A DNA stretch of 64,000 bases from Haliotis rubra. Lineage: Eukaryota. The position numbers and the translations under genes were made by a program. How positions within the stretch are numbered: position 1 is the first letter of the stretch; each line of letters opens with the position of its first letter. Below, piece by piece: positions 13,582 to 51,949 of the stretch. The stretch is taken from contig NW_025767357.1 in assembly GCF_003918875.1 (NCBI RefSeq), positions 1,054,001-1,118,000 of the forward strand. The letters are read 5' to 3'. The notes beneath the pieces are model-generated. The model saw only the letters and a program-made list of their open reading frames with translations, was not told the origin of the DNA and did no database searches.

Positions 13582-14878
13582 CTAATAGAAGCTGGTATTT
13601 TCATTCCATACCGGTTCCCAGGAAGGCCCGTTAGGGTCACCGTCTTCGAAGTCGTACTCCACCACTCCAGACAACAGCTTCGCCTCCTTTGTCGTTGCAA
13701 CCTCCGGAAGACAGTCTCCTATCGGAGACTTGATTTCGCGATGATTAAAAGAATCACACTTGCCAAAGATGTTGATTCCTCTGGATGGCCAATGCCCAGT
13801 CATGAGCCGATGATTGTAAACCTTCTTCTTGTCAGAGATATCTTCAGCCCGAGCCCACTTGGCAGGCGTCATGCAGACGAACACCACAAAGCGCCACCTG
13901 TGGGAATTGAGGCGACCTTTCTCTGGTCTACAATTATCATGCACTGTCCGAGAATCCCAAAGGACCATCCCTCCTTTCGGAACTGGAACCTTAGTGGTAA
14001 CGCAGCCTTTCTCTCTGAACCAAGATTTGTCGTCTTCATTTAATTCATAATGACCGATTCTACTCTTCCTAGCAGCGGACTCAAATTCTTCAAAAAATTC
14101 GTTGAAATATTTATGTGATCCCGACAAAACCCGGAAGCAGAAGTCAGTTTCTGTCGCCTCCTCCAAATACAGGGCGCCTTGGTAACCATGGAGACCAACT
14201 CTCTCTGCCGGTTGGTCGACGTGCAACCATGCTTTCCCTGTGTCATAAATTACGAACTTTTCATCTTCTGGCGGGAAAGATATGGCTACTCCGTCAAAGC
14301 TTGTGAGGAGCTTCTCTGTCTCCCAGACATTAGCAAACACTGGCTTGGTTTTTAATCGGCAGTTCCAGGTGTTTTCGAAATGACCAATGTCATATCCCTG
14401 AATGACTGAATGCAAGTTAGAAGGCCAATCATCTTCCTCAAACTGGGATACCCAATCACGGTACTGGGATATGTACGCGTCACAGTCCTGCGCACTGCAA
14501 ACATCCGGTATTACGGCATATCCTTTCTCCTCAAGATCTTTCATAACTGAGTCCCTGATAAAGAAGGCAAAATATAATACTTTCAACACGGCAATGCAAG
14601 AGTCATCAACGAGGTAATCATGAGGTATCTGCACATGACGAATTTCTCTCTCTTGTGTCAGTGGATCAGCCTTTGTCTAGTTCGGCTTGCCGTGACTGGA
14701 TGCAAAATTGCTGATGAACAATGTTCACTCACATACTCCGATGTCCAATTGGTCATTGTTATATCGGACCGCCTCCGTGGTGTAGTCGTAAATAAATTTA
14801 AGCACGTAAAGACAGGCGTGCTGGAAGATTTACTCACCTGTCAAAAGACGGACTTCCAGGTACCTCACTTTTCGCCAT
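13582..14878 (-). CDS. PhyH-like Fe(II)/2-oxoglutarate dioxygenase, paralog 1
   Basis: Exon 1 14878-14838 (MAKSEVPGSPSFD-R, donor GTGAGT) and exon 2 14554-13582. Motifs WLHVDQ, GSH, GGMVLWDSRTVH and RWRFVVF give the HxD...H triad plus a candidate 2OG-binding Arg. Confidence 0.9.
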
Positions 14879-14883
14879 GATGG

Positions 14884-14929
14884 ATGTGTCGTCTGCTCGC
14901 ACGAGAACGCAAAGTGTCGTCTGCTCGTT
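14884..14929 (-). promoter_or_regulatory. Shared GAGCAGACGACAC motif (two copies) just upstream of the ATG
   Basis: The same motif sits just upstream of the ATG in paralogs 2 (about 26935) and 3 (about 36445), and a degenerate version in paralog 4 (about 42938). Confidence 0.5.
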
Positions 14930-15469
14930 GAGTTGATCGGCTCTATAAAGAGACGAAACGTCTAGACTGTTCTCTAGATGATTATTGCACAACCCAAGAA
15001 CATCGCGGGGAAAGCAGGTGATAAAGATAAGCCATTAGTTGATCCCATTTGTTGTGTATGAGCGATTGTTCCCAAGGTTCATGTCCAATAATTACTATGT
15101 TCATGACCCGGTACTTGAAGTCCCCAACTATTGGACAACAAACACTCACTACAGTCCACCTTAAGGATCAAATGTGAAGCTAAACAGCCATCATTTGTTG
15201 CACAGATTGTTAAGAAGCATTAACCTCATTTGTGATGCGTTATGTGGAATAAAATATAAGGGATGCCTAATTTCACCTGGACCCCATTCCACGAAGTAAT
15301 ATAATAGCTTTGACGATTGCACCTGTCAAAAGTCTGTTTGGTGGAGAAGATAAAAATTATCGGTCAAATCAGTGAGACGGCAACCCGACCGCGTCAGTCG
15401 CCCCTTATCAGTTAGAACTCAGGGTTAGAATAGATCTTCAGCAGCCCATGCTTGAAGAGACAGGCGACA

Positions 15470-15721
15470 AGTGTGAGTGAGTGAGTTTAGTTTTACGCTG
15501 CAATATCCCTGCTATATGGTGGCGATCTGTAAATAATCGAGTCTGGACCAGTCAATCCAGTGATCAACATCACGAACATCGATCTACGCAATTGAGATAC
15601 GATGACATGTGTCATCCAGTTTTCAACCAAGTCAGCGAGCCTGACCACCAGATCCCATTAGACGCCTCTTACGACAAGCATGGGTTACCGAAGATCAATT
15701 CTAACCCGGATCTTCACGGGT
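15470..15721 (-). mobile_element. SINE family B nested in an older, opposite-strand family B copy
   Basis: Consensus match with TSD AGACAGGCG(A/C)CAA. Confidence 0.8.
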
Positions 15722-16024
15722 AGACAGGCGCCAAATGAGATCGGGTGGTCAGGCTCGCTGTCTTAGTTGGCACAAGTCATCGTAATCCAGGTTGCTTATC
15801 GTTGCGCATGCTGCCCATCTCTTATATTGATCTGCTGTTGATCCTTACCATAGGTACTGGTTCCTGAAGACCATGTTTTGTCCTTTCATCAGCTTTCCTG
15901 CATTAGCTCAACCATGAATCCCCACTTACATTATTACACACCAAAGTTACGTCGTGTTTGCATATTTCCTTTCTGAATGGATCAGATCGTATGGGTAAGT
16001 TAAGGCGTTGATCGTATAAATATC

Positions 16025-16629: not shown

Positions 16630-18773
16630 AGGCCTGTATTACACGTCATATACACATAAGGTCTATATTACACGTCATACACACATAAGGTCTATATTAC
16701 ACGTCATATACACATAAGGTCTATATTACACGTCATTCACACATAAGGTCTATATTACACGTCATTCACACATAATGTCTATATACACATACACATAAGG
16801 TCTATATTACACGTCATTCACACGTCATTACACACATAAGGTCTATATTACATGTCATATACACATAAGGTCTATAGTACACGTCATATACACTTATGGT
16901 CTATATTACACGTCATAGACACATAAGGTCTATATTACACGTCATTCACACATAAGGTCTATATTACACGTCATTCACACATAAGGTCTATATTACACGT
17001 CATTCACACATAAGGTCTATATTACACGTCATACACACATAAGGTCTATATTACACGTCATACACACATAAGGTCTATATTACACGTCATATATTACACG
17101 TCATATACACATAAGGTCTATTACAACGTCACACACATAAGGTCTATATTACACGTCATATACACATAAGGTCTATATTACACGTCATAGACACATAAGG
17201 TCTATATTACACGTCATATACACATAAGGTCTATATTACACGTCATTCACACATAAGGTCTATATTACACGTCATATACACATAAGGTCTATAGTAACGT
17301 CATATACACTTATGGTCTATATTACACGTCATACACACATAAGGTATAAAGTTAACGTCATATACACATAAGGTATATACACGTCATATACACTTATGGT
17401 CTATATTACACGTCATACACACATAAGGTCTATATTACACGTCATATACACATAAGGTCCATATTAACGTCATACGTCATATACACTTATGGTCTATATT
17501 ACACGTCATACACACATAAGGTCTAAAGTAAACGTCATAAACACTTATGGTCTATATTACACGTCATATACACATAACGTCTATATTACAAGTCATATAC
17601 ACATAAGGTCTATATTACACGTCATATACACATATGGTCTATATTACACGTCATATACACATAAGGTCTATATTACACGTCATACACACATATGGTCTAT
17701 ATTACACGTCATATACACACATAAGGTCTATATTACACGTCATATACACATAAGGTCTACATATACACATAAGGTCTATACGTCATATACACATATGGTC
17801 TATATTACACGTCATACACACATAAGGTCTATATTACACGTCATATACACATATGGTCTATATTACACGTCATATACACATAAGGTCTATATTACACGTC
17901 ATATATACATAAGGTCTATATTACACGTCATATACACATAAGGTCTATATTACACGTCATCATAAGGTCTATATTACACGTCATATACACATAAGGTCTA
18001 TATTACACGTCATATACACGTCATATACACATAAGGTCTATATTACACGTCATATACACATAAGGTCTATATTACACGTCATATACACATATGGTCTATA
18101 TTTCATATAGGTCTATATTACACGTCATATACACATAAGGTTATGGTCTATATTACACGTCATATACACATAAGGCCCATATTACACGTCATATACACAT
18201 AAGGTCTATATTACACGTCATATACACATAAGGTCTATATTACACGTCATACACACATAAGGTCTATATTACACGTCATATACACATAAGGTCTATATTA
18301 CACGTCATACATACACATAAGGTCTATATTACACGTCATATACACATAAGGTCTATATTACACGTCATATACACATAAGGTCTATATTACACGTCATATA
18401 CACATAAGGTCTATATTACACGTCATATACACATAAGGTCTATATTACACGTCATATACACATAAGGTCTATATTACACGTCATATATTACGTCATATAC
18501 ACATAAGGTCTATATTACACGTCATATACACATAAGGTCTATATTACACGTCATTCACACATAAGGTCTATATTACACGTCATATCACACATAAGGTCTA
18601 TATTACACGTCATATACACATAAGGTCTATATTACACGTCATATACACATAAGGTCTATATTACACGTCATATACACATAAGGTCTATATTACACGTCAT
18701 ATACACATAAGGTCTATATTACACGTCATATACACATAAGGTCTATATTACACGTCATATACACATAAGGTCT
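16630..18773. repeat. Satellite/minisatellite array, 29-bp unit ACACGTCATATACACATAAGGTCTATATT
   Basis: About 70 tandem near-identical units are directly visible. Confidence 0.97.
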
Positions 18774-18777
18774 CGAG

Positions 18778-19905
18778 GTGGACTTGGAATACCCCAAGGC
18801 ATTACACACATCACACAACAGCTACCCCCTGGCCCCCGAACGTATGAGGATTAACCCAGACTGGATGTCTGAGTACCAACATAACTTGCTAGGTGGGCGG
18901 GTGGCAGACGTTGAAAAACTCGTGCCCAACTTAATGGATAAGACCAAGTACATCGTTCACTATCGCAACCTACAGCTGTACCTGTCGTTGGGTATGAGGC
19001 TGACCAAAATACACAGGGTGCTCGTGTTCGACCAGAGCCCCTGGATGGAGCCCTACATCAGAATGAACACGGACCTGAGAAAGCTGGCCACCAGTGACTT
19101 TGAGAATAACCTCTACAAGCTCATGAACAACTCGGTGTTCGGTAAGACTATGGAGAACCTGAGGAAACGCGTGACCGTTAAGCTGGTTCGGTCGAGAGAG
19201 GACGACAAGCTCAGGAGGCTGATAGCCAGCCCGGCATTCAACCGGAGCAAGATATTCACCGACGACCTGGTTGTCCTACACATGAAGAAAAGCCACATCA
19301 AATTCAACCGGCCTGTTTACGTGGGGATGAGCATCCTCGATTTATCCAAACACCTGATGTACGACTTTTACTACAACGAGCTCAAGAAACAGTACGGCGA
19401 CAGGTGCGAAGTGCTGTACACTGACACGGATTCCCTGCTGATGGAGATTCGAACCGAGGACGTGTACGAGGACATGAAGAAACGCCTCGATTTGTACGAC
19501 ACCAGCGACTACCCCAAGGACCATGCCATACACAGCACGGTAAATAAAAAGGTCCTAGGTAAGATGAAGGACGAGTGTGCTGGCACGCCCATAGCCGAGT
19601 ACATAGGCTTGAGGCCCAAGATGTACTCCATCCTGAAGGCCGACAATGGTGAGATCCAAAAGGCGAAGGGTGTTAAGAAGTACGTGGTTAAACAACACAT
19701 CAAACACGCCAGATTCAAGGAAGCCCTGTTCAAGACCCGTACCTTCAGGCATAAAATGAACACGCTTAGAAGTGATGGGCATAGGATATACGGACTGACG
19801 ATAAACAAGACGTCCCTGTCGCCGATGGACACTAAGCGTTTGATAGCTATTGATGGGATAAACACGTACGCGTACGGGCATGAGAAAATTGAACCAAGAA
19901 CATAG
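18778..19905 (+). CDS. Protein-primed family B DNA polymerase, C-terminal part (Polinton/adintovirus type)
   Basis: EVDLEYP, KLMNNSVFGK, YTDTDS, GKMKDE and LRPKMYS motifs. The N-terminus is missing and the ORF abuts the satellite. Confidence 0.92.
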   Translation: MDLEYPKALHTSHNSYPLAPERMRINPDWMSEYQHNLLGGRVADVEKLVPNLMDKTKYIVHYRNLQLYLSLGMRLTKIHRVLVFDQSPWMEPYIRMNTDLRKLATSDFENNLYKLMNNSVFGKTMENLRKRVTVKLVRSREDDKLRRLIASPAFNRSKIFTDDLVVLHMKKSHIKFNRPVYVGMSILDLSKHLMYDFYYNELKKQYGDRCEVLYTDTDSLLMEIRTEDVYEDMKKRLDLYDTSDYPKDHAIHSTVNKKVLGKMKDECAGTPIAEYIGLRPKMYSILKADNGEIQKAKGVKKYVVKQHIKHARFKEALFKTRTFRHKMNTLRSDGHRIYGLTINKTSLSPMDTKRLIAIDGINTYAYGHEKIEPRT

Positions 19906-19911
19906 GTCGGG

Positions 19912-20886
19912 ATGTCACGGAACCAGAGAAAGTTTGAGGCTATTTACTACAGCCCGCGTGGGTACTTGAAAGGAGCTAGCGCCGTACATAAGCTGGCTAA
20001 AATGGCGCGAGTACCCCCAAACGAGGCCAAAGCGTGGCTTGAAAAACAAGCCCTGTGGCAGATCTATTTACCGGCACCACGCTACGTGCCTAGAAGGAAG
20101 TTCGGTATTAACATACCCAATAGCGTTCACCAGGCCGACCTCCTGTTCCTACCCCACGATAAGAGGTACAAGTATACCTTAACCGTCGTGGACGTGGCCA
20201 GTCGCTACAAGGAAGCCGAACCCTTAACCGCGAAAGACTTGGCCCAGGTAGCCCGCGGATTCGAACGCATATACAAACGCAGCCCGCTGACGTGGCCCAC
20301 AGAGCTGCAAGTCGACCCCGGGCGGGAGTTCATGGGTGCTGTGTCACACCTGCTAGACAAACACGATACCAAGGTCAGGCATGACACGGCCGGAGCCCAT
20401 CGCAGCCAAGCCATAGTTGAGAGATTCAATAGGACTTTGGCTGAGCGCTTATTCGGGCATCAGTATGCGAGAGAGATGGCCAACCCGGGAAAACGATTGA
20501 CTGAATGGGTAGCGCGTCTACCTCAGATGGTGTCAGCCATCAACCATGAAACCACTCGGCTCACTGGTAAGAAACCAGCCGACGCTATCAAACTAAAATC
20601 AATAGTGGCTGAGTCGGCTGCACCATTGCGTGGGAAGGAGAAACAGATACCAGATAGGACCCTCGTGAAGTACCTCTACCAGTCGGGGGAACACGAGGGT
20701 GATAGTCGTAAGCGAGCCACCGATCCGATATGGTCAGTCAAAACTTACAATATAGATAAAGTGGACATCAAAGCCGACGAGCCGAACTTGTACTACTTGA
20801 GAGATGGGCCAGGGAGAGGTTTCGTTAGAGAGGAATTATTGATCATACCGTACGACACAATGTTACCCCCCAAGCAAAATATTTAA
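19912..20886 (+). CDS. Retroviral-like DDE integrase (Polinton c-integrase)
   Basis: HQADL (D), LTVVDVASRY, QVDPGREF (D) and IVERFNRTL (E) in an uninterrupted 324-aa ORF. Confidence 0.92.
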   Translation: MSRNQRKFEAIYYSPRGYLKGASAVHKLAKMARVPPNEAKAWLEKQALWQIYLPAPRYVPRRKFGINIPNSVHQADLLFLPHDKRYKYTLTVVDVASRYKEAEPLTAKDLAQVARGFERIYKRSPLTWPTELQVDPGREFMGAVSHLLDKHDTKVRHDTAGAHRSQAIVERFNRTLAERLFGHQYAREMANPGKRLTEWVARLPQMVSAINHETTRLTGKKPADAIKLKSIVAESAAPLRGKEKQIPDRTLVKYLYQSGEHEGDSRKRATDPIWSVKTYNIDKVDIKADEPNLYYLRDGPGRGFVREELLIIPYDTMLPPKQNI

Positions 20887-23340: not shown

Positions 23341-23967
23341 CACATTCTCAGAAAATCCACTAACTGATCAATTGTTCAGTGTATTTGTACTATAGGCCAG
23401 AGTGAGTGAGTGAGTTATTGTTTAACGTCACATCGGCAATATTGCAGCCATATCGTGACGAACTATAGGCCAGAGGCCTCCTGAGTACGGAAATAAATAT
23501 TGATTGATACTGACAACGCCCATACACATAAGGCCTGTATGATATATGTCCATACACATAAGCACTATATAAAGTATTTCTATACACAAAAGGTCTATAT
23601 AACACAGGCCTATATGGTGCAGTGTACACACCTAAAACCTATATGACAAGGCCCATACACATAAGGCCTATATGGTGCAGTCTACACACATAAAACCTAT
23701 ATGACAAGGCCCATACACATAAGGCCTCCATGACAGTGGCCTATAAATATAAGGCCTGTGTAACACATGCCTACCTGTCACATAAACACAATCTATCACA
23801 TCAAGCCTATGCACAGCAGGCCTCTTTAACAAAGGCCTATTTCTTCTCTTTAAGCAGAAGATGAACAATGATATTTTCAAAGTCCGTTAGCAGTCTCAAG
23901 TAATTGTTGTCATGTTCTTGTTCAATAGCCTTTGCAACAAACTATTTCTGGCCTCCCTTGGTCATGA

Positions 23968-26922
23968 CTAATAGATGCTGGTATTTTCATTCCACGCCGG
24001 TTCCCAGGAAGGCCCGTTGGGTTCGCCGTCTTCGAAGTCGTACTCCACCACTCCAGACAACAGCTTCGCCTCCTTTGTCGTTGCAACCTCCGGAAGACAG
24101 TCTCCTATCGGAGACTTGATTTCGCGATGATTAAAAGGATCACATTTGTCAAAGATGTTGATTCCTCTGGATGGCCAGTGTGATGTCATCATCCTATGAT
24201 TGTAAGCCCTGAGTTTGGAGGGAATATCATCGGCCCGAGCCCACTTGGCGGGCGTCATGCAGACGAAAACTACAAAGCGCCACCTGTCGGAATTCGGGCG
24301 GCCTTTCTCTGGTCTACAATTATCATGCACTGTCCGAGAATCCCAAAGGACCATCCCTCCTTTCGGAACTGGAACCTTAGTGGTAACGCAGCCTTTCTCT
24401 CTGAACCAAGATTTGTCGTCTTCATTTAATCTATAATAATCGATTCTATTACTCTTCCTAGCAGCGGCCTCAAATTCTTCAAAGAATTCGTTGAAATATT
24501 TATGTGATCCCGACAAAACCCGGAGGCAGAAGTCAGTTTCTGTCGCCTCCTCCAAATACAGGGCGCCTTGGTAACCATGGAGACCAACTCTCTCTGCCGG
24601 TTGGTCGACGTGCAACCATGCTTTCCCTGTGTCATAAATTCCGAACTTTTCATCTTCTGGCGGAAAGGATATGGCTACTGCGTCAAAGCTTGTGAGGAGC
24701 TTCTCTGTCTCCCACACTTTAGCAAACACTGGCTTGGCTTTTAATCGACAGTTCCAGGTGTTTTCGAAATGACCAATGTCATATCCCTGAATGACTGAAT
24801 GCATGTTAGACGGCCAATCATCTTCCTCAAACTGGGACAGCCAATCACGGTACTGGGATATGTACGCGTCACAGTCCTGCGCACTGCAAACATCCGGTAT
24901 TACGGCATATCCTTTCTCCTCAAGATCTTTCATAACCGAGTCCCTGATAAAGAAGGCAAAGAAATAAGTGTAACGTTCAACACGACAAATACAAAGTCAT
25001 CAACCGTATATAATGTATCTGAAAATGGTCAGCTTGTGTGCGTTGATCAGTCTCGTCTTGTTCGGCTTGCTGATGAACTATATTCACTCACTCACTCACT
25101 TGTCCAATTGGTCATTGTTATATTCCGTCCTATTCAGTTACAAACTTAGGTGAAGTGAGTGTGTTGTAGGCCTCCTTGTAACCACACACCTTGTTATTAA
25201 CGTCGGGAACATGAGAATATACCTCGTGACCTGTGTTCTTAACGTGACCTTGGTAACTGTGTGTCATTGTACCTTCTATGTCACGTGAACTTGGCCAGAG
25301 GGTGTCACTGTACTTTCTACATCACTTTAAAAGGTCAACATTTGATTTTGAATATATTATTGTGAAGAGTGAGTGAGTGAGTTTAGTTTTACGCCTCACT
25401 CAGCAATATTCCAGGCATATGGCGGCGGTATCTAAATAATCGAGTCTGGACCAGACAATCCAGTGATCAACAGCATGAGCATCGATCTGCGCAATTGGGA
25501 ACCGATGACATGTGTCAACCAAGTCAGCGAGCCTGTCCATCCGATCCCGTTAGTCGCCTCTTACGACAAGCATAGTCGCCTTTTGTGGCAAGCATGGGTT
25601 GCTGAAGACCTATTCTACCCCGGATCTTCACGGGTCTTATTGTGAAGACTGACTGACTGAGTTTGGTTTTACGCCGCTTTTAGCAATATTCCAGCAATAT
25701 CACGGTGGGGGCACCAGAAATGGGCTTTACTAATTGTACCCATGTGGGGATTCGAACCCGGGTCTTCGGCGTGACGAGCCCACGCTTTAACCACTAGACT
25801 ACCCCACCGCCCCTTATTGTGAAGAGAGTGAGGGAATGAGTGAGTATTATTTTATGACGATTTTAGAAGTATTCCAGCTAAAAAGAGGGAAATGGACTTT
25901 ACATTTATACCAAAGTGGGAAATCGGACCAGGGGCCTTCAGTGACACCATCTGACACTGTAAAGACCCGACCTTGCAACCCCGCCGCCACTCACTTACAT
26001 CTTACTGTACCGTGTTATCTCCCTTGGACTATAGCCACAGAAATCTTATTTGCGAAATGATACACAAGGACCACCGGTCCACCTTATGATTTTATTAATA
26101 ACAGGAGTAGTAACCAAGGAAACGTAAAACGAGTACGATCACACACCTATGTGTCTCTCGTGATCTTTTTAAATGATATAGGGATATATTTATAGCAGTT
26201 CGGGGCTTTATTTCATTTTCCTTTCCAAAACAACCGGACCGGGACAAGGCTCGAGCATACAGAATTACATACATTTTGTTTCGTATTGTGTTGCCTTGTA
26301 ACAATTGTTAATGTGCTGTTGATACTGGAGACTTTGACAACTACACATGCATGACCTTGGGAGTTTGTTGCTTTTTAGTGTCTTTTTGTCATTCTATCTA
26401 TAAGGTACAGACCTCCCAGAACTCCCAACGACAAACCAGTGATTAATAACATGGAGTTCACTTTGGCAGCCAAAATATTTCAGTCGAATTTTAAGACTCC
26501 GACCATTTGTTTGCCAGATTAACTAAAAAGTACTCATAAGTTCAAATATGCTTAAGCTAGGATAAGAATCCAGAAAGATTAACGTAATAATATATTTTCA
26601 GCGAATGCTTAAAATGAGAAATAATTAGGCATGTTATAAATTGCCAAANNNNNNNNNNNNNNNNNNNNNNNNNNNNNNNNNNNNNNNNNNNNNNNNNNNN
26701 NNNNNNNNNNNNNNNNNNNNNNNNNNNNNNNNNNNNNNNNNNNNNNNNNNNNNNNNNNNNNNNNNNNNNNNNNNNNNNNNNNNNNNNNNNNNNNNNNNNN
26801 NNNNNNNNNNNNNNNNNNNNNNNNNNNNNNNGCTATCGTAAATAAATTAAGTAGGCCTACGTACAGGCAGGATTTACTAACCTGTCAAAAGACGGACTAC
26901 CAGGTACCTCACTTTTCGCCAT
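23968..26922 (-). CDS. PhyH-like Fe(II)/2OG dioxygenase, paralog 2
   Basis: Exon 1 26922-26882 (MAKSEVPGSPSFD-R, donor GTTAGT) and exon 2 24943-23968. WLHVDQ and SRTVH are intact. The intron spans an N gap. Confidence 0.88.
25367..25636 (-). mobile_element. SINE family B (duplicated-hairpin variant)
   Basis: Consensus match with TSD TTATTGTGAAGA. Confidence 0.85.
25648..25813 (-). mobile_element. SINE family A, CAGT-tail subfamily
   Basis: Consensus match with TSD TTATTGTGAAGA. Confidence 0.85.
26649..26831. other. Assembly gap
   Basis: Run of N. Confidence 1.
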
Positions 26923-28109
26923 GATGGATGGATGTGTCGTCTGCTCGTTGAGATGATCAGCGTAGAGGCAAAACTTCTAGACTGTTCTCTATGTATCTAG
27001 GAAGGGTGTTGCACAAGCCGTGGACATCTCGGGGAAAGACGGTGATAAAGATAACGATAGCCATTAGTTGATCCTATTAGTTGTGTTCGAGCGATTGTTT
27101 CCAAGGTTCATGTTCAATAATGACTATGTTCATGACCCGGAACTTGAAGTCCCCACCTCATGGGCAACAAAACACTCACTACAGTCCACCTTAAAGGAGA
27201 ATACTAGACAACTGCAATAATTTGCTTGGTGAAAGATAAAGTCATCAGAAACATGTACCCCATTTTTTATTTCAAAAATGTGGTATATTATGTTTTTATC
27301 GCGAAAACAGTTATCTGAGCTTCGGTCATTATGCATATTCCGCTGGAACTCACGTGACCTTTCCGCTCGTGACGTCATATGTGACAAGCGTCCGCCATAT
27401 TGCCAAGGAACAAGCGCTACAGTAATACAAATTGCGTTGTTTCTGTCGTTTTTGTAAATGTTACGATGGTGTATTCCGTTGCCTGGGGATGCACGGAATC
27501 ATCGAACAATGGAAAGAGCCACCATTTCTTCCGTTTTCAAGTAAAGAGACAGATTTAGGCACGATAAATGCTCCGATCACTCCGAATCGGACGCATATGA
27601 AAGCGACATGCACACAGGGGGTATGAAAATCCCAAAGCTAGGCTTAAGAGAGAAGAAGTACCCACGAGATTCATTTATACTCCATCATTCCGTTACAACT
27701 TACTGTCAGTGGTATTTTTAACATAAATTAGATTATGGATCAAATGTGAAGCTTACCAACTATCATGAGACGCACAGATTGCTAGGAAGCATTTGCCAGA
27801 TTTGTGGCGCGACCTGTGGACTAGAATATAAGGGGCGCCTGTAGACTGTAATTACACCTGGTCCCCAATCCACGAAGTGATAGAAGAGCTATGACGATTG
27901 CACCTGTTAAAAGTCTATTTGTTTATTCTTTAACACCTCATTACGTAATATGCCAGCTGTACATAGAAGTCGGTCTGTAAATAATCAAGTTTGGACCGAA
28001 CAGTCCAGTGAGTGACAGCATGAACATCGCTATTTCGAGAAGATAACAATTATCAGTGAAATCAACGAAATGGCAACCCGACTCCGTTAGTCGCCCTTGA
28101 CCAGAACTC

Positions 28110-28338
28110 GTGTAGATCCGGGTAGAATTGATCTTCAGTCACCCATGCTTGTCGTAAGAGGCGACTAACGGGATCGGGTGGTCAGACTCGCTGACTTGGC
28201 TGACACATGTCATTCTATCCCAAATGCGTAGATCGATGCTCATATTATTGATCACTGGATTGTCTGGTCCAGATTCAATTATCTGCAGACCGCCGCCATA
28301 TAACTGGAATATTGCTGAGTGCGGCGTTAAACAACGAA
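28110..28338 (+). mobile_element. SINE family B
   Basis: Consensus match. Confidence 0.8.
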
Positions 28339-30114: not shown

Positions 30115-30115
<1 letters not shown>

Positions 30116-30160
<45 letters not shown>

Positions 30161-33764: not shown

Positions 33765-36437
33765 TTAAAGACTAGTATTTTTCTTCCACACAGGTTCCCA
33801 GGAAGGTCCGTTGGGTTCACCGTCGGAAAAGTCGTACTCCTCAACTCCAGACAACAACTTGGCCTCCTTTGTCGCTGCAACTTCCGGAAGACTGTTACCG
33901 ATCGGAGATTTAATCTTACTGTGATCTGAAGGGGGATCGGACTTCTCAAAGATAATGATACCTTGGGATGGCCAATGCCCAGTCATCAGCCTATGATTGT
34001 AAGCTTTCTTCTTGTCAGAGATATCTTCAGGACGTGCCCACTTGGCGGGCGTCATGCAGACGAACACCACAAAGCGCCACCTGTCGGAATTGGGGCGGCC
34101 TTTCTCTGGTCTACAATTATCATGAACTGTCCGAGAATCCCATAGGACCATCCCTCCTTTCGGAACTGGAACCTTAGTGGTAACGCACCCTCTCTCCTTG
34201 AACCAAGATTTGTCGTCTTCCCGTAACATATAGAACTTATCGATGTTGCTTTTTTTCGCAGAGGCCTCAAATTCTTCAAAGAATGCGCTGAAATGTTTAT
34301 GTGATCCCGACAAAACACGGAAGCAGTAATCAGTTTCTGTAGTCTCCTCCAAATATAGGGCGCCTTGGTAACCATGGAGACCAATTCTTTGTGCCGGTTG
34401 GTCAAGATGAAGCCATTTTTTCCCAGTATCATACATTCCAGTTTCTCGGGCTTCGGGTGGTTCAGATATGGCTATAGCGTCAAAGCTTGTGTGAAGTTTC
34501 TCAGTCTCCCAGACTTTAGCAAATACTGGCTTGGCTTTAATGCGACAGTTCCAGGTGTTTTCGAAATGACCGACATCATAACCTTGGATTATTGAATGCC
34601 CTTGGTACGGACATTCGTCTTCCTTAAACTGGGACAGCCAATCACGGTACTGGGATATGTACATGTCACAGTCCTGCGCACTGCAAACATCCGGTATTAC
34701 GGCATACCCTTTCTCCTCCAACTCTCGAATAACTGCATCCCTGACAAGATGAAAAAAAAAAACTGTTATAAACGAGGCGATCTTGAGCAACTTACATATA
34801 TTTAAACGTGTGTTAAAACAATCGTATTCCACTTTATCCCAGATAGGAATTGTCGATTCAGCTGACAGCCGACCATCTGATATTCTGGGCACGGCTACGG
34901 AATATGTGTGCGGGTAATGTAGACAATGGAGGTCAAACCAAATATGTTTAAGGTCTGAAATACAAGCACGATCTCTATAGTGAGTGAGTGAGTATGGTTT
35001 TACGCCGCTTTTAGCTATATTCCAGCAATATCACGGCGGGGACACCAGAAATGGGCTTCACACATTGTGCCCATGTGGGGAATCGAACCCGGGTCTTCGG
35101 CGTGACGAGCCAACGCTTTAACCACTAGGCTACCCCACCGTCCCCGATCTCTATAGCCATACTGTGATGATAATGTTCCCATATTTCATAAAGGAACATC
35201 CTTGATGCCGTTCACAACCATAACATAGATACAGTGCCAACCCATGAAAAAAAATGTGTACATCAGGATTTGCTTCTGTATCATGATCAAACCACCAAAC
35301 CAATGCGTGATCAGCCGTTCATGTCGTAGTATAGATGATGGGGTACAACGTTCGCATCTCTAATGTCGTAGCCCAGTATTCCGTCCGTGAATTTAGAGCA
35401 CGTCAAAATATTGACATCCTATGACGTCATTTGCATATTGGAGTGATATATGACGTCACCCCACCCAGCAGTTCTGAATCAGCTCAGGTCTCGCTGTCAC
35501 ACCCTATAGTCTACGATGCTGCTGCTGCTGATGATGATATGTGATTATAACGCTGCGAAATTCAACTCCGGTCACTGAATCAGCCATACTGTACCGCTCC
35601 AGCATGGTGAATTATCACAGCCAGCCAACAAAGCAGTATTGTGATCTGACGAAGCAGTATTGTGATCTGAACAATCAGTATTGTGATCTGGCGAAGCTCT
35701 ATTGTGATCTGAACAAGCAGTAGTATTATCTGACTCAGTATTATTATCTGAAACAGTATTGTGATCTAACGAAGCGGTATTGTGATCTGACGAAGCAGTA
35801 TTGTGATCTGAAGCAGTATTATTATCTGAATAAGTATTCTGATCTGAAACAGTATTGTGTTCTGAAGAAGCAGTATTGTGGTCTGACGAAGCAGTATTGT
35901 GGTCTGACGAAGCGGTATTGTGGTCCGACGAAGCAGTATTGTGGTCCGACGAAGCAGTATTGTATTCTGAAGAAGCAGTATTATGATCTGAAGCAGTGTT
36001 GTGATCTAACGAAGCAGTATTGTGATCTGACGAAGCAGTATTGTGATCTAACGAAGCAGTATTGTGATCTGAAGAAGCAGTATTGTAATCTGAAGCAGTA
36101 TTATTATCTGAATAAGTATTCTTATCTGAAACAGTATTGTGTTCTGAAGAAGCAGTATTGTGATCTGACGAAGCAGTATTGTGGTCTGACGAAGCAGTAT
36201 TGTGGTCCGACGAAGCAGTATTGTATTCTGAAGAAGCAGTATTATGATCTGAAGCAGTATTGTGTCTGAAACAGTGTTGTGATCTGAAGAAGCAGTATTA
36301 TGATCTGACGAAGAAGTATCTACCTGGGCATTTGGTCGACAATAGATCAATAAATTCAGTTTGGACTGTACACTAGTATCAGTCTGAACGTACCTGTCAA
36401 AATTCGCTAGTCCTTCCACGTTGATTTCTGCCGCCAT
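33765..36437 (-). CDS. PhyH-like Fe(II)/2OG dioxygenase, paralog 3
   Basis: Exon 1 36437-36394 (MAAEINVEGLANFD-R, donor GTACGT) and exon 2 34740-33765. WLHLDQ and SRTVH are intact. Confidence 0.88.
34980..35145 (-). mobile_element. SINE family A
   Basis: Consensus match with TSD GATCTCTATAG. Confidence 0.85.
35630..36320. repeat. Intronic minisatellite, 18-21-bp unit GAAGCAGTATTGTGATCTGAC
   Basis: Directly visible tandem array. Confidence 0.92.
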
Positions 36438-40472: not shown

Positions 40473-42333
40473 TTACTTCCAGACGTTTTCCCAGGAAGGC
40501 CCGTTGGGTTCACCGTCGTTGAAGTCGTACTCCTCCACTCCGGACAACAACTTCGCCTCTTTTGTCGTAGCAACTTCCGGAAGACAGTCGCCGATAGGAG
40601 ATGTAATGTCGCTGAAATGTGGAGGATGGGAAGCTTCAAAAACTTGGACTCCCAGAGACGGAAAATTGTCGGTCGTCATGATTTTCTTGTAAGCCTTTTT
40701 TCTGGCTTCCATGTCACCAGGGTTAGCCCACTGCGCAGGCGTCATGGATACAAGAACCACAAAGCGCCACCTGTCAGGATTAGGGCGGCCTTTAACTGGT
40801 CTGCAATTGTCATATACTGTTCGCGAATCCCAAAGGACCATTCCTCCTTTGGGGACGGGAACCTTGGTGGCAATGCATCCTTTTTCTTTGAACCAAGCCT
40901 TTTCATCCTCCCCTAATTTATTGAATTTGTCTCTGGTACTCTTCCTGGCATTGTCTTCAAATTCTTCATAGTATGTTTCGAAGTGTTTATGTGACCCCGA
41001 CAGGACCCGGAAGCAGTAGTCCGTTTCTGACGCCTCTTCCAGAAACATTGCACCCTGGTAACCATGGAGACCAATTCTTTGTGGCGATTGGTCAGCAAGG
41101 AACAAGTCTTTCCCGTAGTCATAAATACCAAATCTTTCAGTTTCAGGTGGGAATGATACAGATACTCCTTCGAAACTTGTAAGTAGCTTCTCTGTCTCCC
41201 AAATTTTAGCAAAAACTGGCTTGGCTTTTAATCGGCAGTTCCAGGTATTTGCAAAATGACTTATATCATAACTCTGTATGACAGATTCCACTTGAAATGG
41301 CCAATCATCTTCCTCAAACTGGGACAGCCAGTCGCGGTACTGGGATATGTACGTGTCACAGTCCTGCGCACTGCAAACATCTGATATCACAGCATATCCT
41401 TTCTCCTCTAGGTCTCGTATAACAGATTCCCTGAGAACAAATATAACAAAAGGATTAAAAGCAATTAGAGTGAGTGAGTTTGGTTTTACGTCGCTATTAG
41501 CAATATTCCAGCAATATCACGGCGGGGTACACCGGAAATGGAATTCGCACATTGTACCTATGTGGGGAATCGAAAGCGGGTGTTCGGCGTGACTAGCGAA
41601 CACTTTAACCACTAGGCTACCCCACCGCCCCACAAATGCAATAAGAAGGCATTACGGTGAACATTTGCGGTAATGTATAGGTTAGTGCACAGGGGTTTGA
41701 ATCACTGTTTGGACAATAATTAAAAAAACTATGAATCTAGATTTTATATCTTATGAGTAACTTATACTTCAAATTTGAACGAAATCGGTAAACAAATGGA
41801 TTTTTTAGAAAATTCTCACGGTTGCAAAAATCTAGATTTTTATTTTTTTAAATCATTGTCGAAACAGTGATTCGACCCCCTGTGGGTTAGTACCCTGCGA
41901 CTTCGACTACCCAGCGTATGATTGCTCCGTTCTGGTATAAGCTGTACCCTGAGCCTATTCGTGAATGGAACTTGGTCTTCGATCTGACCAAACAGCCATC
42001 CAATCAGATTAACCCAATGAGAATAACAAGGAACCAATGCACAAACGAAATATTTGCTGCTTTGAAATAGTAGTTGACAACATGGAAGGAATATTTCAAC
42101 CTCTTATGAGATTTGAGAAATATATCATTCGCCTTGACTTTGAAACTAGTTGCACGGCGTTTAAGGGGTCCACAAGTATATACAGCATAGTGCATAGTGT
42201 TTGAGGGTAACATTAGGTATGATTTTTGGGGTAAATGTTTAATTTCGAACCTTTCGTTTTAACGGTATGTGATTTTTGTGTTCAAGAAGTGGAAGAACAG
42301 TTGATGTCTTCATACGACTATAGTAAATCCATC

Positions 42334-42364
<31 letters not shown>

Positions 42365-42923
42365 AAAAACACACTCAAAAACACACAGACACAATTTGAC
42401 AATGGTGACATGGCTCATTTGTTGGTAGCGCCGCAATTATCTGCGCAGAGTTGCGTCCTTTAGTCGTGCCAGAGTCGTGAGATCGAATCCAAAATGAGTC
42501 TATAAGACTACTCTTATACCCTGCTCGCATGTTTCACTCAAGTGATCTACATGTCATTTTGTCTTTCCTCCCGCATAAAGCTATTATGTTATTATTTGAC
42601 AGAAATACTGTGTTAAGCGGCTCTAAACCAAACCGGGCGATGGGGTAGCTTAGTGGTTAAAGCGTTCGCTCGTCACGCCGAAGACCCAGGTTCGATTCCC
42701 TACATTTGTACAATGTGTGAAGCCCATTTCTGGTGTCCCCCGCCGTGATATTGCTGGAATATTGCTAAAACTAAACTCACTCACTAACTCTAAACCGAGC
42801 CAGCACACCCACTCGTGGTCTGATAATCAATTCAACAAAGTGACTATCAGTGTATGAAGTACTAGTGCACGCTACCAACCTGTTGATACCGGATAGGTCA
42901 TGGATCTCGCCCTCTGACGCCAT
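40473..42923 (-). CDS. PhyH-like dioxygenase paralog 4, predicted catalytically inactive (pseudoenzyme)
   Basis: Exon 1 42923-42880 (MASEGEIHDLSGIN-R, donor GTTGGT) and exon 2 41430-40473 form an open frame. HxD has become LAD and the distal H has become Y (SRTVYDN). Confidence 0.85.
41468..41631 (-). mobile_element. SINE family A
   Basis: Consensus match. Confidence 0.8.
42635..42790 (+). mobile_element. SINE family A
   Basis: Consensus match. Confidence 0.8.
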
Positions 42924-47959: not shown

Positions 47960-48185
47960 TGGTTTGGCTGTTGTTTAACCCCGCACACAGCAATATTCCA
48001 CCTACATGGCGGCGGTCTGTAAATAATCAAGTCTGGACCAGACAATCCAGTGATCGACAACATGAACATCGATCTACGTAATTGGCCAACGAAGTCACAG
48101 AGTCTGACCTCCCGATCCCGTTAGTCGCCTGTTACGACAAACATGGATTGCTGAAGACCAATTCTAACCCGGATCTTCACGGGTC
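47960..48185 (-). mobile_element. SINE family B
   Basis: Consensus match. Confidence 0.75.
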
Positions 48186-49522
48186 TTTTGATACCGTGAT
48201 CGGGACGCTGGCTGACTGGCTGAGTATGGTTTTACGCCGTTTTTAGCAATATTCCAGCAATATCACGGCGGGGGACACCAGAAACTGGCTTCATGATCGG
48301 GACGCACGTAGAAACAGAAGATAAGCAAAAGTCATTTAAACAATATTTATTCAAGAAAAAAGTAGCTGAAATAAAATATTTGAATACACGTCTAAGTAAA
48401 CAAATGTACAGACCGTGTATATATACGACTGAAAAGAAGATAAAATATGCCTTATATCATGTATTTACAGATTAAGAGTACAAATTAAAAATCGTGTTTT
48501 ATTAACTTCTGTTGAGTACTATCTGTCAGTGGTATGTTATAAGGCTGGACAATAGCATACAGCCGTACCCTCGGCGCAAGTTCCGGGTTCGAATCCAGAC
48601 GTGTAAAGATATACTTTGAAGACACTCACAGTAGTTAAATAGTACATAAATAAATATCAGGGCAACATCTCAAGGACTAAAGACACGATTTGCATATTGT
48701 AAAATGCTTTCTAACTTCCCCAGGTGAAAACTGACACCGCCTGGAAATGGTATGTAAACTTATTTGGAAACAATATATACAAGCTGGACGGACGTAGTCC
48801 TTTCTTATATGACCACATTTGCGGTTTTCAGTGGGATGGTGTCAAAGAGGAAAAATAAATGCATCATTAATCAACATTGACTTGCAGCAGTAAATCAAAG
48901 GTATCCATGGGTGGTCACGATTAACCTTCGCCTCAACATATGCATAATGAAAAAGCCAATTGGATTTTTGGTTTGGTTTCATTGTTTAAAGCCGTACTCA
49001 GCAATATTCCACCTATATGGCGGCAGTCTGTAAATAATCGAGTCTGGACCAGATAATCCAGTGATCAACAGCATGAGCATCGATCTACGCAACTGGGATA
49101 CGATGACACGAGTGACCCTGACCACCCGATCCCGTTACGACAGGCATGGGATGCTGAAGATCAATTGGATTTAACGCCGCATTGAATATTGCTCCATATC
49201 ACTACGTTTCAAATCGATCCCAAAGTGATATGAGTATATAATGTCCAACACTGTCCTGAAACCCCCGACTACGGGTGTTGGGCTGACAAAACTTAAAACA
49301 TAAGCGGTGAACTGGGATTCGTAGACCTTTGCTCTAGACAATGTGACGCAGTTCTACATAACAAGTTCCGGTGACTTACCTAATGTAAGATTATTATCAT
49401 ATCAATATCAATTCATGTGCAAGTTTATGAACACAAAATTAGCAGTCAGAGTATGTACTCAGTCGTCGACATGTACAAAAATAATTTTTTTGTACATTTC
49501 ATTCAAATCCCGTGACATTACA

Positions 49523-51949
49523 TTAGGTCATCGTGTGGTCCCATTCGGGTTCCCAACCGGGGCCATTTGATTGGCCATCATCAAAATCGTACTCGTCCAC
49601 AGCAGCCAATAGGCGAGCAGAGGGAGTACTTCCTTCTAGAGGGATTCCTTCTGGCGGCATGACGTCAACACAATACATAGGATCGCCATTGTGCTTTGGC
49701 TGGTTGCTCTTAAACACTTCTGTTTCCTGAGAAGCCCAGTGATTGGTCAATTTAATTTCATTATAGGCACCTGCACGTTTCTGTTTGTCTTTATCAGCTG
49801 CCCAATGAGCAGGCATCATGCAGATAAAGACGACCCAGCGCCACCTATCGTCATGAGGACGCCCGAGAACTGGTGGGACATTATCGTGGACGGTTCTCGA
49901 GTCCCAAAGCACGACCCCGCCTTTTGGGACTGAAACTTTGACTTCTTCGCAACCCCGTTTCTCATACCACGCAGTTTGAGGTTTCGTAAGCCTGTAGAAC
50001 TCGCTCTTCAAGCTCCTTTTCCTGGCGTTGTCGAAATGGCTGAAAAATTCCTCGAAGTATCGGTGTGAATGTGACAATACTCTGAAGCAATGGTCCATTT
50101 CTGTCGCTTCTTCGAGATACAGAGCCCCCTGGTAGCCATGGAGACCTTTCCTCGACGGCTTCTGGTCGAGGTGAAACCATTTCTTGCCCTCATCAAAGAC
50201 TCCATCAGCCTCCTCAGGCGGCCTCGATATAGCAACGCCATCAAAACTAGACAGGAGTTTCTCCGTATCCCAGACCGAGGCGTACACTGGTTTGACCTTC
50301 AACCTCGCAGACCACGAGGCCCCAAAGTGTCCAATCCGGTACTGGTGTATAATTGACCTTCGACTCTTTGGGAAGTCGCCATTTTGAAATGTTCCAAGCC
50401 ATGATTTGTATTGTCCAATCAGCTCATCGCATTCTTTGGCAGTTATGACGTCAGGAATGACACAATATCCTTTTGTTGCCAGTTCCTTTTTCGTTGCTTC
50501 GCTGCAATCAAACAGATGTATTTCAAATATTACGCAAATGCTAAATGGAAATACTTCCCATACAGGCATCGGGTAACTGAAACTCTGAAACAGATCGGTC
50601 CCGTTCCCGTAAAAAACGTCCGGAATGTATTAAAATGTATTAAAAATTAAAATGGGCCCAGAATGAGCATACGTTATAAAATACTTCCTTTCCAGTCGCT
50701 ATACTTAGAAATGTTGTAATTAACACCTGTCTAAAGATTCATTTAAAAACTGCTAAACACTTTCAGGAAATCAAAATAATTATTTGGAACTGGATATAAA
50801 TTAGCACCTGCCGATCTGATTTTAAAGAAATATATAAAGAACAAAAAATATAAAGTCCGGTCTATCATAGCATGGGGCGTGGGGAAGACCAGTGGGTAAA
50901 GCGTTCGCTCGTCCCGGGTTCGATTCCCAACATGGGTACAATGTGTGAATCCCATTTCAGGTGTCCCTCTCCGTGATACGTGATATTGCTGGAATATTGC
51001 TAAAAGCGGCGTAAACCCCAACTCACTCACGCACGCACTCACTCACTCACTCACTCACTCACTCACGCACTCACTCACTATCATAGCATCCTCGCAATAA
51101 ATCTCTCTTACAGACCCTACACAATATGAATAAAGAGACCTTGACTCACATCCACTGACCTTTTCTCAGCTCAAGCATCATATAAATGCATTCCTACATA
51201 TAATATATATATATATATATACATGGCTATACGACCGTTTGGCGACATCCTGCTCGCTGCCCGTATAAATGCATTCTGTGAAACAAACCTATTTTACAGT
51301 TACTCTTTTATTAGGACTCAACAACGATTAACCATTCACACCAGCTACGGCCGAACACATTGACGTGCACGACATGTACTTTCCCGTACAGTGAGTGACC
51401 TTTGTTTTACGCCACTTACTACTATTCCTGCGATACTGCGACAATGAGCACTAGAAATTGGTTTCACACATTTTACATTTTACCCATGTAGGGAATTAAA
51501 CCCGGGACTTAGCCAGGCTACCCTGCTGTTGTAAAACAGGGTGCATTTACGTGCTTGTTATGTCTCCTAATCAACAGTAATCGTGCTATTGTCAATACGG
51601 AATCAACGTCTAGACTTTTAATCAATAAAACTTGACAAATTTATCCAACACCCGGGGTGGTGGGGCAGCCTAGTGGTTAAAGCGTTCGCTCGTCACGCCG
51701 AAAACCCGGGTTCGATTCTCCACATGGGTACAATGTGTGAAGCCCATTTCTGGTGTCATTGCTGACATTGCTGGAATATTGCTAAAAGCGGCGTTAAACG
51801 TAACTCAATCAATATCCAACACCCGATTACCATAAACAACTTTCAGCAATATGTCAACACATTTTCAGAGTAACACAACACTGTACAACGACAAGTCGAA
51901 CATTAGTTCAAATATTCTACCTGTCAATTGAAAGCGCTGACTCCGCCAT
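49523..51949 (-). CDS. PhyH-like Fe(II)/2OG dioxygenase, paralog 5 (most divergent)
   Basis: Exon 1 51949-51921 (MAESALSID-S, donor GTAGAA) and exon 2 50501-49523. WFHLDQ, GGVVLWDSRTVH and RWRWVVF are intact. Confidence 0.87.
50874..51078 (+). mobile_element. SINE family A with a long (ACTC)n tail
   Basis: Consensus match with TSD CTATCATAGCAT. Confidence 0.8.
51654..51811 (+). mobile_element. SINE family A
   Basis: Consensus match with TSD TATCCAACACCC. Confidence 0.8.

What the first reader, a model, noticed from the sequence alone, without database searches (positions are those of the whole stretch)
13582..51949. Five-gene tandem cluster of uncharacterised PhyH-like Fe(II)/2OG dioxygenases in an animal genome
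Seen: five co-oriented paralogs share one architecture, a 29-44-nt coding exon 1, a phase-2 intron and the whole catalytic domain in one exon of about 960-980 nt. Divergence ranges from near-identical (1 vs 2) to deep (5). Known: HxD...H plus a downstream Arg defines 2OG oxygenases of the PhyH type. Inference: this is a lineage-specific expansion that may form a specialised-metabolism or dietary-detoxification module. From memory, similar WDSRTxH-type proteins are patchily distributed (fungi, microbes, large DNA viruses), so the single-exon domain could reflect an old horizontal or retro-origin. I could not verify that here.
Basis: partly seen in the sequence, partly recalled or inferred. Interest (0 to 1): 0.75.

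Follow-up and report, generated by a model that had tools for sequence, protein, structure and literature searches.

The report
Abalone tandem PhyH-like dioxygenase genes
Five neighbouring, intact copies of an uncharacterised iron/2-oxoglutarate dioxygenase gene sit in the blacklip abalone genome. The array is real and shared by other abalones, one copy has lost its iron-binding histidines, and the gene family is common in molluscs and already annotated, so the finding is solid but only moderately novel.

Summary
The window is Haliotis rubra, contig C2467. It carries exactly five minus-strand paralogs. Each has a short coding exon 1 (41, 41, 44, 44 and 29 nt), a phase-2 GT-AG intron and one 958-979-nt exon that encodes the whole PhyH-type (PF05721) domain. 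The N gap lies inside the intron of gene 2, and its flanks are collinear with gene 1.

All five genes are already RefSeq "uncharacterized protein" models. The same five orthologue groups occur in H. asinina and H. rufescens (four in H. cracherodii). The H. rubra genome holds at least 11 family members.

The family is multi-copy across molluscs and present in an annelid. It has about 28-31% identical relatives in giant-virus MAGs, bacteria and fungi. It is not orthologous to PHYH or PHYHD1. The nearest solved folds are Gig2 and YbiU (DUF1479), whose function I found no report of.

Genes 1, 2, 3 and 5 keep HxD...H and the downstream Arg. Gene 4 has lost both histidines in three abalone species, yet it is as conserved as its catalytic neighbours, so it is probably a non-catalytic partner.

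The scan had noted gene 4 and a related PhyH/thioesterase locus elsewhere in this genome.

The parts
13582..14554 (-). g1 exon 2 (973 nt, stop included). It encodes the whole catalytic domain. RefSeq LOC124257097, 337 aa.
   Evidence: ORF; acceptor and frame; PF05721 39.8 bits; equals the C-terminus of P0510.
14838..14878 (-). g1 coding part of exon 1 (41 nt, ends in phase 2). The intron 14555-14837 is 283 nt.
   Evidence: the N-terminus equals P0510.
23968..24943 (-). g2 exon 2 (976 nt). 338-aa protein, annotated as LOC124257096 isoform X3.
   Evidence: PF05721 43 bits; equals the C-terminus of P0509.
26882..26922 (-). g2 coding part of exon 1 (41 nt, phase 2).
   Evidence: Read directly. It is 92% identical to, and collinear with, g1 exon 1.
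26649..26831 (.). Assembly gap inside the g2 intron (24944-26881). It does not touch coding sequence and was not filled.
   Evidence: the flanks are collinear with g1.
33765..34740 (-). g3 exon 2 (976 nt). LOC124257096 isoform X1, 339 aa, equal to P0003.
   Evidence: AF2 model with mean pLDDT 92.7.
36394..36437 (-). g3 coding part of exon 1 (44 nt, phase 2).
40473..41430 (-). g4 exon 2 (958 nt). LOC124257098, 333 aa, equal to P0004. The His of HxD is Leu and the distal His is Tyr, while Asp and Arg are kept. Candidate pseudoenzyme.
   Evidence: PF05721 31.8 bits.
42880..42923 (-). g4 coding part of exon 1 (44 nt, phase 2).
49523..50501 (-). g5 exon 2 (979 nt). LOC124257100, 335 aa, equal to P0020. 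It is the most divergent copy, about 49-51% identical to g1-g4.
   Evidence: groups with H. rufescens P0021.
51921..51949 (-). g5 coding part of exon 1a (29 nt, phase 2).
51223..51248 (-). g5 alternative coding exon 1b (26 nt, also phase 2), used by RefSeq isoform X2 (P0518).

Best explanation
This is an old tandem array, shared within the genus Haliotis, of five intact genes. They belong to a divergent, uncharacterised branch of the PhyH clan of Fe(II)/2-oxoglutarate dioxygenases.

Shown:
- The gene structures, the intact frames and purifying selection.
- Conservation of the array in several abalone species.
- A confidently predicted double-stranded beta-helix fold.
- Strict conservation of the H-x-D...H metal triad and a downstream Arg in g1, g2, g3 and g5.

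Inferred:
- Those four proteins bind Fe(II) and 2-oxoglutarate and hydroxylate, or otherwise oxidise, small-molecule substrates that differ between paralogs.
- They probably act in the cytosol. I saw no obvious N-terminal signal peptide, no C-terminal SKL-type peroxisomal signal and no membrane anchor, but this was judged by eye.
- The substrates are most plausibly diet-derived or lipid-like metabolites.

g4 has lost both histidine ligands but is conserved as strongly as its neighbours. It most likely no longer turns over 2-oxoglutarate and instead serves as a non-catalytic partner or ligand-binding paralog. The precedent is TlxI, a dysfunctional paralog that forms a heterodimer with the active TlxJ.

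The conserved phase-2 intron after a very short first coding exon is a trait of this sub-clade. The more distant paralogs in the same genome can be read as a single uninterrupted ORF.
For: Structure and frames:
- Gene structures and frames.
- Exon translations equal RefSeq models.

Family and fold:
- PF05721 is matched over its cut-off.
- AF2 model with mean pLDDT 92.7 and pTM 0.91.
- Fold matches: Gig2 6akz Z 20.9 and YbiU 4rgk Z 20.3, then ColD, GriE and SnoN at Z about 17.
- H126, D128, H221 and R237, plus the D216-S217-R218 motif, are invariant in 50 sequences from molluscs, an annelid, giant-virus MAGs, bacteria and fungi.

Selection and conservation:
- Pairwise dN/dS is 0.17-0.29 for every measurable pair, including those with g4.
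- Orthologs of all five genes exist in H. asinina and H. rufescens, and consecutive LOC numbers in H. rufescens suggest the same gene order (inference from numbering).
- g4 orthologs share H->L and H->Y. They are 92.8% and 86.5% identical to H. rubra g4, against 89.7/85.1% for g3 and 84.2/76.7% for g5.

Literature:
- The TlxI/TlxJ precedent: PMC12141560.
Against: - No member of this sub-family has a known substrate or a demonstrated activity.
- The nearest solved folds, Gig2 and YbiU, are themselves of unknown function as far as I could find (E. coli y-ome papers).
- No RNA evidence could be obtained for H. rubra.
- No co-clustered partner enzyme lies in or next to the window. The neighbouring 53 kb shows only VWA-domain exons.
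- The scallop result is at Pfam-domain level and may include other PhyH proteins.
- The localisation is judged by eye, not by a predictor.
- The pairwise dN/dS for g4 averages two lineages, and its terminal branch is long (0.23).
- The partner role for g4 is by analogy only.
Confidence: 0.6

Rival explanations
1. The family entered a spiralian ancestor by horizontal transfer from a giant virus, a bacterium or a fungus, and then expanded. The intron-poor gene structure would be a remnant of that origin. This concerns origin and does not exclude the functional reading above.
For: - Named animal hits are only molluscs and the annelid Owenia. An Atlas feature search lists a cluster that is mostly eukaryotic with Rotifera the commonest phylum.
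- The animal-type sequences form one clade (SH-like 95-97, FastTree).
- Two high-scoring representatives outside the animal-type clade lie on compact metagenome contigs with ORFans and ankyrin genes, which looks giant-virus-like.
- A GVMAG homolog, a large metagenomic clade around it, and cyanobacterial, myxobacterial, actinobacterial, chytrid and basidiomycete homologs exist at 28-31% identity.
- Four other H. rubra paralogs can be read as one ATG-to-stop ORF.
Against:
- The word-based search misses distant kin.
- The tree is unrooted and weakly resolved outside the animal clade, and composition bias was flagged.
- Identity to any candidate donor is only about 30%, so vertical descent with losses fits equally well.
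- Intron-poor genes also arise by retroposition.
Confidence: 0.2
2. The proteins hydroxylate macromolecules (proteins or nucleic acids) rather than small molecules, in the manner of ribosomal or JmjC-type oxygenases.
For: The closest folds, Gig2 and YbiU, have no substrate that I could find, so the fold does not exclude this. The conserved Arg and His positions outside the triad (for example R81, R218 and H270) could bind an anionic polymer.
Against: - Every other strong structural neighbour acts on a small molecule: proline hydroxylase, GriE, SnoK/SnoN, KanJ, EctD, ColD and PrhA.
- The proteins are single-domain with no recognisable targeting or binding module.
- Rapid tandem duplication and 50% divergence between paralogs are typical of enzymes acting on diverse small substrates.
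Confidence: 0.1
3. Some copies, above all g4 and perhaps g1, are silent or decaying duplicates, and only part of the array is functional.
For: g4 lacks two of the three metal ligands and has the longest terminal branch of the g1-g4 copies (0.23). g1 evolves faster than g2: it is 83.6-86.6% identical to the 'a' copies of other species, against 91.1-93.8% for g2 and the 'b' copies. Expression could not be checked.
Against: - All five frames are open with intact GT-AG sites.
- dN/dS is 0.17-0.29.
- g4 has full-length 333-aa orthologs with the same two substitutions in H. asinina and H. rufescens, at 86-93% identity. A neutrally decaying gene would not show this.
Confidence: 0.1

Closest known systems
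Pfam PhyH family PF05721 (human PHYH and PHYHD1 as characterised animal members)
   Same: The Pfam model is matched above its cut-off. The fold is a double-stranded beta-helix. HxD...H and a downstream Arg are conserved.
   Different: - They are not orthologs. The family profile finds no PDB chain at E<=10, and a broad profile reaches PHYH and PHYHD1 only at E 0.055-0.066.
- Canonical multi-exon PhyH genes lie elsewhere in the genome.
- I saw no PTS-like signal (by eye).
- There is an extra conserved C-terminal segment, about residues 300-335 of P0003, modelled confidently up to about residue 330.
Gig2-like / DUF1479 proteins (C. albicans Gig2 6akz; YbiU 4rgk, 2csg, 2dbi)
   Same: These are the best structural matches (Z 18.5-20.9, 263-282 aligned residues). 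Some bacterial, fungal and metagenomic relatives of the family also give sub-threshold or precomputed PF07350 hits.
   Different: The abalone proteins are about 100 residues shorter and 12-17% identical to them. The window proteins do not match PF07350. I found no reported function for DUF1479 either, so the resemblance gives no substrate.
Microbial natural-product and amino-acid PhyH-type oxygenases (SnoK/SnoN, GriE, proline hydroxylase H11, ColD, KanJ, EctD, PrhA, SptF)
   Same: They share the fold (Z about 16-17.5). There is a weak sequence link to SnoK (E 5e-6) in which the distal-His motif aligns. All are single-domain small-molecule oxidases.
   Different: Identity is 11-18%. Those enzymes sit in multi-enzyme biosynthetic clusters. 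Here the neighbours are only paralogs, repeats and a VWA-repeat gene.
TlxI/TlxJ and TlxA/TlxC heterodimeric 2OG oxygenases of Talaromyces (PDB 7vbq)
   Same: A dysfunctional paralog is encoded beside active paralogs of the same fold, which is the proposed analog for g4 (PMC12141560). 7vbq is among the fold matches (Z 16.8).
   Different: TlxI lacks the 2OG-binding Arg, whereas g4 keeps the Arg and the Asp but lacks both His. No interaction has been tested here. One system is fungal secondary metabolism, the other an animal gene array.

Membership tests
PhyH family (PF05721, cupin clan 2OG oxygenases) | Match to the Pfam model above the gathering score (22 bits) | tested here: met
   g1 39.8, g2 43.0, g3 34.4 and g5 34.1 bits. 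g4 scores 31.8 bits in the genome scan, and its orthologs score 37-38 bits. The truncated g4 ORF alone scored 21.1 bits.
PhyH family (PF05721, cupin clan 2OG oxygenases) | Double-stranded beta-helix fold like solved family members | tested here: met
   AF2 model with mean pLDDT 92.7. Foldseek probability is 1.00 to proline hydroxylase, SnoK, KanJ and EctD. VIA-align Z is 16-21.
PhyH family (PF05721, cupin clan 2OG oxygenases) | H-x-D...H iron-binding triad | tested here: met
   H126, D128 and H221 (P0003 numbering) are invariant in 50 diverse relatives and present in g1, g2, g3 and g5. This is NOT met by g4, which has L-x-D...Y, as do its orthologs.
PhyH family (PF05721, cupin clan 2OG oxygenases) | Basic residue downstream of the distal His that binds the 2OG C5 carboxylate | tested here: inconclusive
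   R237 is invariant and present in all five genes. It lies at the start of a predicted strand. Its contact with 2OG is inferred, because no coordinates or ligand were available.
PhyH family (PF05721, cupin clan 2OG oxygenases) | Fe(II)- and 2OG-dependent turnover | not testable with these tools
   This needs recombinant protein and a succinate or CO2 release assay.
Orthologs of animal PHYH / PHYHD1 | Close sequence relationship to the solved human enzymes (2a1x, 2opw) | tested here: not met
   No PDB hit with one protein or with the family profile. With a much broader profile the E-values are only 0.055 and 0.066. Separate multi-exon PhyH genes exist on other contigs.
Gig2-like / DUF1479 (PF07350) | Match to the Pfam model above the gathering score (27 bits) | tested here: not met
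   No PF07350 hit for any window protein at E<=1. Distant relatives give only sub-threshold hits of 19-22 bits. It is nevertheless the nearest solved fold.

The most novel reading that the evidence does not exclude
A PhyH-clan dioxygenase family was acquired once by a spiralian ancestor from a giant virus or a microbe. It then radiated in molluscs into tandem arrays that oxidise diet-derived metabolites. In abalones one copy became a conserved iron-less paralog that acts as an obligatory heteromeric partner of its neighbours. This would be an animal counterpart of the fungal TlxI/TlxJ arrangement.
Probability: 0.12. Interest if true: 0.65.

Novelty: new member of a known kind. Interest (0 to 1): 0.35.

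Why it matters
If the enzymes are active, they form a large and wholly uncharacterised set of oxygenases in commercially important molluscs. There are at least 11 genes in this abalone and many in bivalves. They may bear on how grazers and filter feeders handle algal metabolites and toxins.

The conserved iron-less paralog g4 gives a clean test case for pseudoenzyme evolution within an animal tandem array.

The phyletic pattern (spiralians, giant viruses, bacteria, fungi) makes the family a reasonable candidate for a study of gene transfer into animals.

None of this changes current understanding yet. The genes are annotated, the fold is familiar and the chemistry is unknown.

Tried and rejected
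- Naming unnamed homologs with the listing of cluster members gave no organism names. The look-up of encoding contigs gave only sample codes.
- PDB sequence searches with one protein and with the family profile found nothing relevant.
- Gene neighbourhoods of the two bacterial homologs were uninformative: a beta-lactamase-fold gene and an RNA polymerase subunit.
- PF01643 (acyl-ACP thioesterase, N-terminal model) has no match in the genome, although a PF20791 C-terminal-domain ORF lies near a distant paralog.
- Literature searches for this family in abalone found nothing. One search was badly framed and useless.
- Other ORFs in the window have no Pfam match and are mostly repeat-derived.
- Rejected: orthology to PHYH or PHYHD1.
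- Rejected: a multi-enzyme metabolic gene cluster, because no partner enzyme was found within about 80 kb.
- Rejected: a sixth hidden copy in the window.
Full-length searches used database proteins identical to the exon translations. One script joined exon 1 and exon 2 in memory only to check the frame, and printed 32 residues.

Full report
**What is there.** The window is Haliotis rubra contig C2467, positions 1,054,001-1,118,000. Three annotated H. rubra proteins equal the window's exon translations exactly. ORF listing and tblastn find exactly five copies of one gene family, all on the minus strand, and no further fragments.

**Gene models.** Each gene has a short coding first exon, a GT-AG intron in phase 2, and a single second exon that carries the entire domain.

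| Gene | Coding exon 1 | Exon 2 | Protein | RefSeq model |
|---|---|---|---|---|
| g1 | 14838-14878 (41 nt) | 13582-14554 (973 nt) | 337 aa | LOC124257097 |
| g2 | 26882-26922 (41 nt) | 23968-24943 (976 nt) | 338 aa | LOC124257096 isoform X3 |
| g3 | 36394-36437 (44 nt) | 33765-34740 (976 nt) | 339 aa | LOC124257096 isoform X1 |
| g4 | 42880-42923 (44 nt) | 40473-41430 (958 nt) | 333 aa | LOC124257098 |
| g5 | 51921-51949 (29 nt) | 49523-50501 (979 nt) | 335 aa | LOC124257100 |

Where a full-length protein was needed I used the identical database proteins.

**The gap.** The N run at 26649-26831 begins 51 nt after the g2 donor site, so it lies inside the g2 intron (24944-26881). BLAST of the g1 region against the g2 region shows the same order and orientation on both sides of the gap:
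- exon 2 and its flanks: g1 13526-14610 against g2 23913-25004, 92.6% identical;
- an intron piece: g1 14708-14764 against g2 25067-25123;
- exon 1 with its donor: g1 14827-14899 against g2 26871-26947;
- the 5' flank: g1 14914-15167 against g2 26934-27198.

The gap therefore sits in g2-specific intronic material and has no bearing on the reading frame. I did not try to fill it.

**What the proteins are.**
- All five match Pfam PhyH (PF05721) above its cut-off.
- An AlphaFold model of the g3 product, built on 48 homologs, is confident (mean pLDDT 92.7, pTM 0.91).
- Foldseek matches PhyH-clan small-molecule oxygenases with probability 1.0 but TM-scores of only about 0.45-0.56.
- Re-alignment with VIA-align puts Candida Gig2 (6akz, Z 20.9) and enterobacterial YbiU (4rgk, 2csg, 2dbi; Z 18.5-20.3) on top. 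ColD, GriE, SnoN, SptF, proline hydroxylase, PrhA and KanJ follow at Z about 16-17.5.
- I found no reported function for DUF1479/YbiU; the papers that mention it include the E. coli y-ome surveys.
- By sequence the family is isolated. Neither one protein nor the family profile finds any PDB chain, even at E<=10.
- A much broader profile reaches SnoK (E 5e-6), Gig2 (1.5e-3), human PHYH (0.055) and PHYHD1 (0.066).
- The genome also holds separate multi-exon PhyH genes on other contigs.

The refutation condition '1:1 orthologs of a characterised animal enzyme' is therefore not met.

**Catalytic residues.** I aligned 50 sequences spanning molluscs, an annelid, giant-virus MAGs, bacteria, fungi and unnamed metagenomic proteins (24-77% identical to g3). 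Fourteen columns are invariant. They include H126, D128, H221 and R237 in g3 numbering, and the D216-S217-R218 motif that precedes the distal His. g1, g2, g3 and g5 have all of them. The role of R237 in binding 2-oxoglutarate is inferred from its position, not shown.

**Gene 4.**
- g4 reads L-x-D instead of H-x-D, and Y instead of the distal His, while keeping D128 and R237.
- Its 333-aa orthologs in H. asinina and H. rufescens carry the same two substitutions.
- These orthologs are 92.8% and 86.5% identical to H. rubra g4. That is at least as conserved as g3 (89.7% and 85.1%) or g5 (84.2% and 76.7%).
- Pairwise dN/dS of g4 against g1-g3 is 0.17-0.23.

This is the pattern of a maintained pseudoenzyme, not of a decaying duplicate. 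A documented precedent is the fungal TlxI/TlxJ pair. There a dysfunctional PhyH-type paralog forms a heterodimer with an active one and raises its catalytic efficiency about 80-fold (PMC12141560; PDB 7vbq appears among the fold matches). That g4 works this way is only an analogy.

**Evolution of the array.**
- The genome has at least 11 family members. Five are in the window. Two nearly identical copies lie on the plus strand 54-62 kb upstream on the same contig. Three lie on contig C2189 and one on C247.
- In a 135-sequence maximum-likelihood tree (LG+G4), g1-g4 form a clade with only Haliotis sequences (SH-aLRT 100). g4 branches first, and g3 is orthologous to an H. cracherodii protein.
- In the same tree g5 pairs with an H. 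rufescens ortholog. It is sister to the group holding the two upstream copies.
- The four copies on other contigs fall in a second, mollusc-wide clade.
- Cluster membership shows orthologs of all five genes in H. asinina and H. rufescens, and of g1/g2, g3 and g5 in H. cracherodii. Consecutive LOC numbers on one H. rufescens contig suggest the same order, though this is an inference from the numbering.
- The array therefore predates the split of these species. It is genus-level, not specific to H. rubra. g1 and g2 are 92% identical (dS 0.14), which is not near-identical.
- The four distant paralogs can each be read as one ATG-to-stop ORF, and two of them end in a hydrophobic tail. The short first exon and the phase-2 intron therefore characterise the C2467 sub-clade.

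**Wider distribution.**
- The word-based search lists named hits from gastropods, bivalves, a chiton and the annelid Owenia at 46-92% identity.
- The exhaustive profile search finds 480 representative clusters at E<=1e-30 and 3,623 at E<=1e-3. The top-scoring named ones are again molluscs and Owenia.
- A giant-virus MAG encodes a 28% identical homolog with the same motifs. It heads a large metagenomic clade.
- Cyanobacterial (Hormoscilla) and myxobacterial (Nannocystaceae) MAGs carry 29% identical copies.
- A chytrid, a basidiomycete yeast, and actinobacterial and alphaproteobacterial MAGs appear at 28-31%.
- Two high-scoring representatives outside the animal-type clade sit on compact contigs with ORFans and ankyrin genes.

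Most hits are unnamed, the FastTree backbone is weak, and absence from other animal phyla was not demonstrated. Horizontal origin therefore stays an open possibility, which I put at about 0.2.

**Function.** There is no direct evidence.
- The window and about 80 kb around it contain no recognisable partner enzyme. What is there: repeats, a Polinton-like fragment, and minus-strand VWA-domain exons between the upstream pair and the window. This is a paralog array, not a multi-enzyme cluster.
- Second lead: an ORF with an acyl-ACP-thioesterase C-terminal domain lies about 6 kb upstream of a distant paralog on C2189.

Both leads are compatible with diet-related or acyl-type small-molecule substrates, but they prove nothing about the window genes.

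**Verdict.** The finding is a new, uncharacterised branch of a known enzyme kind. It is already annotated as hypothetical proteins, and it includes a conserved iron-less paralog. Interest is moderate.

Noticed in passing
window 23968-36437 (g2 and g3): RefSeq merges g2 and g3 into one locus, LOC124257096. Isoform X1 is g3 and X3 is g2. Isoform X2 (P0512) is a chimera whose first 195 aa equal g3 and whose last 151 aa equal g2. It is either a mapping artefact between paralogs or a real trans-paralog splice.
   Followed up: partly
window 51223-51248 (-): g5 has an alternative 26-nt coding first exon inside its intron, also ending in phase 2. It is used by RefSeq isoform X2.
   Followed up: partly
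window 18778-20886 (+): Polinton/Maverick-like fragment between g1 and g2. It has a DNA-polymerase-like ORF (phrog_1907, E 6.8e-7; no Pfam hit) followed directly by an rve integrase ORF (PF00665).
   Followed up: partly
window 16630-18773: A 2.1-kb array of a 29-bp unit abuts the Polinton-like fragment, and short related repeats occur at 23606-23727 near g2. An earlier first-reader note (s1-328065) treats this as the birth of a satellite.
   Followed up: no
window 25365-25812 (g2 intron): SINE-like insertions, one with a tRNA-like head, account for much of the size difference between the g2 intron (1938 nt) and the g1 intron (283 nt). Related copies lie near 12000-12147, 15469-15782 and 28106-28335.
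   Followed up: no
window 35631-36319 (g3 intron): A 21-bp minisatellite of about 34 copies lies inside the g3 intron.
   Followed up: no
window 1720-2383: An 81-bp tandem repeat (8 copies) makes up much of the 283-aa ORF at 1919-2770, which has no Pfam match and is most likely not a gene.
   Followed up: partly
L020-L024 (G000:C2467:1001500-1051499): At least five minus-strand exons encode VWA domains (PF00092, up to 95 bits). They lie between the two upstream PhyH copies and the window, which points to a VWA-repeat gene interrupting the seven-gene PhyH region.
   Followed up: partly
L006, L009, L017 (G000:C2189 about 4.948 Mb and 5.065-5.073 Mb): Distant paralogs can be read as a single uninterrupted ORF, and two end in a hydrophobic C-terminal tail. 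An ORF with an Acyl-ACP_TE_C domain (PF20791, 26 bits) lies about 6 kb upstream of one of them.
   Followed up: partly
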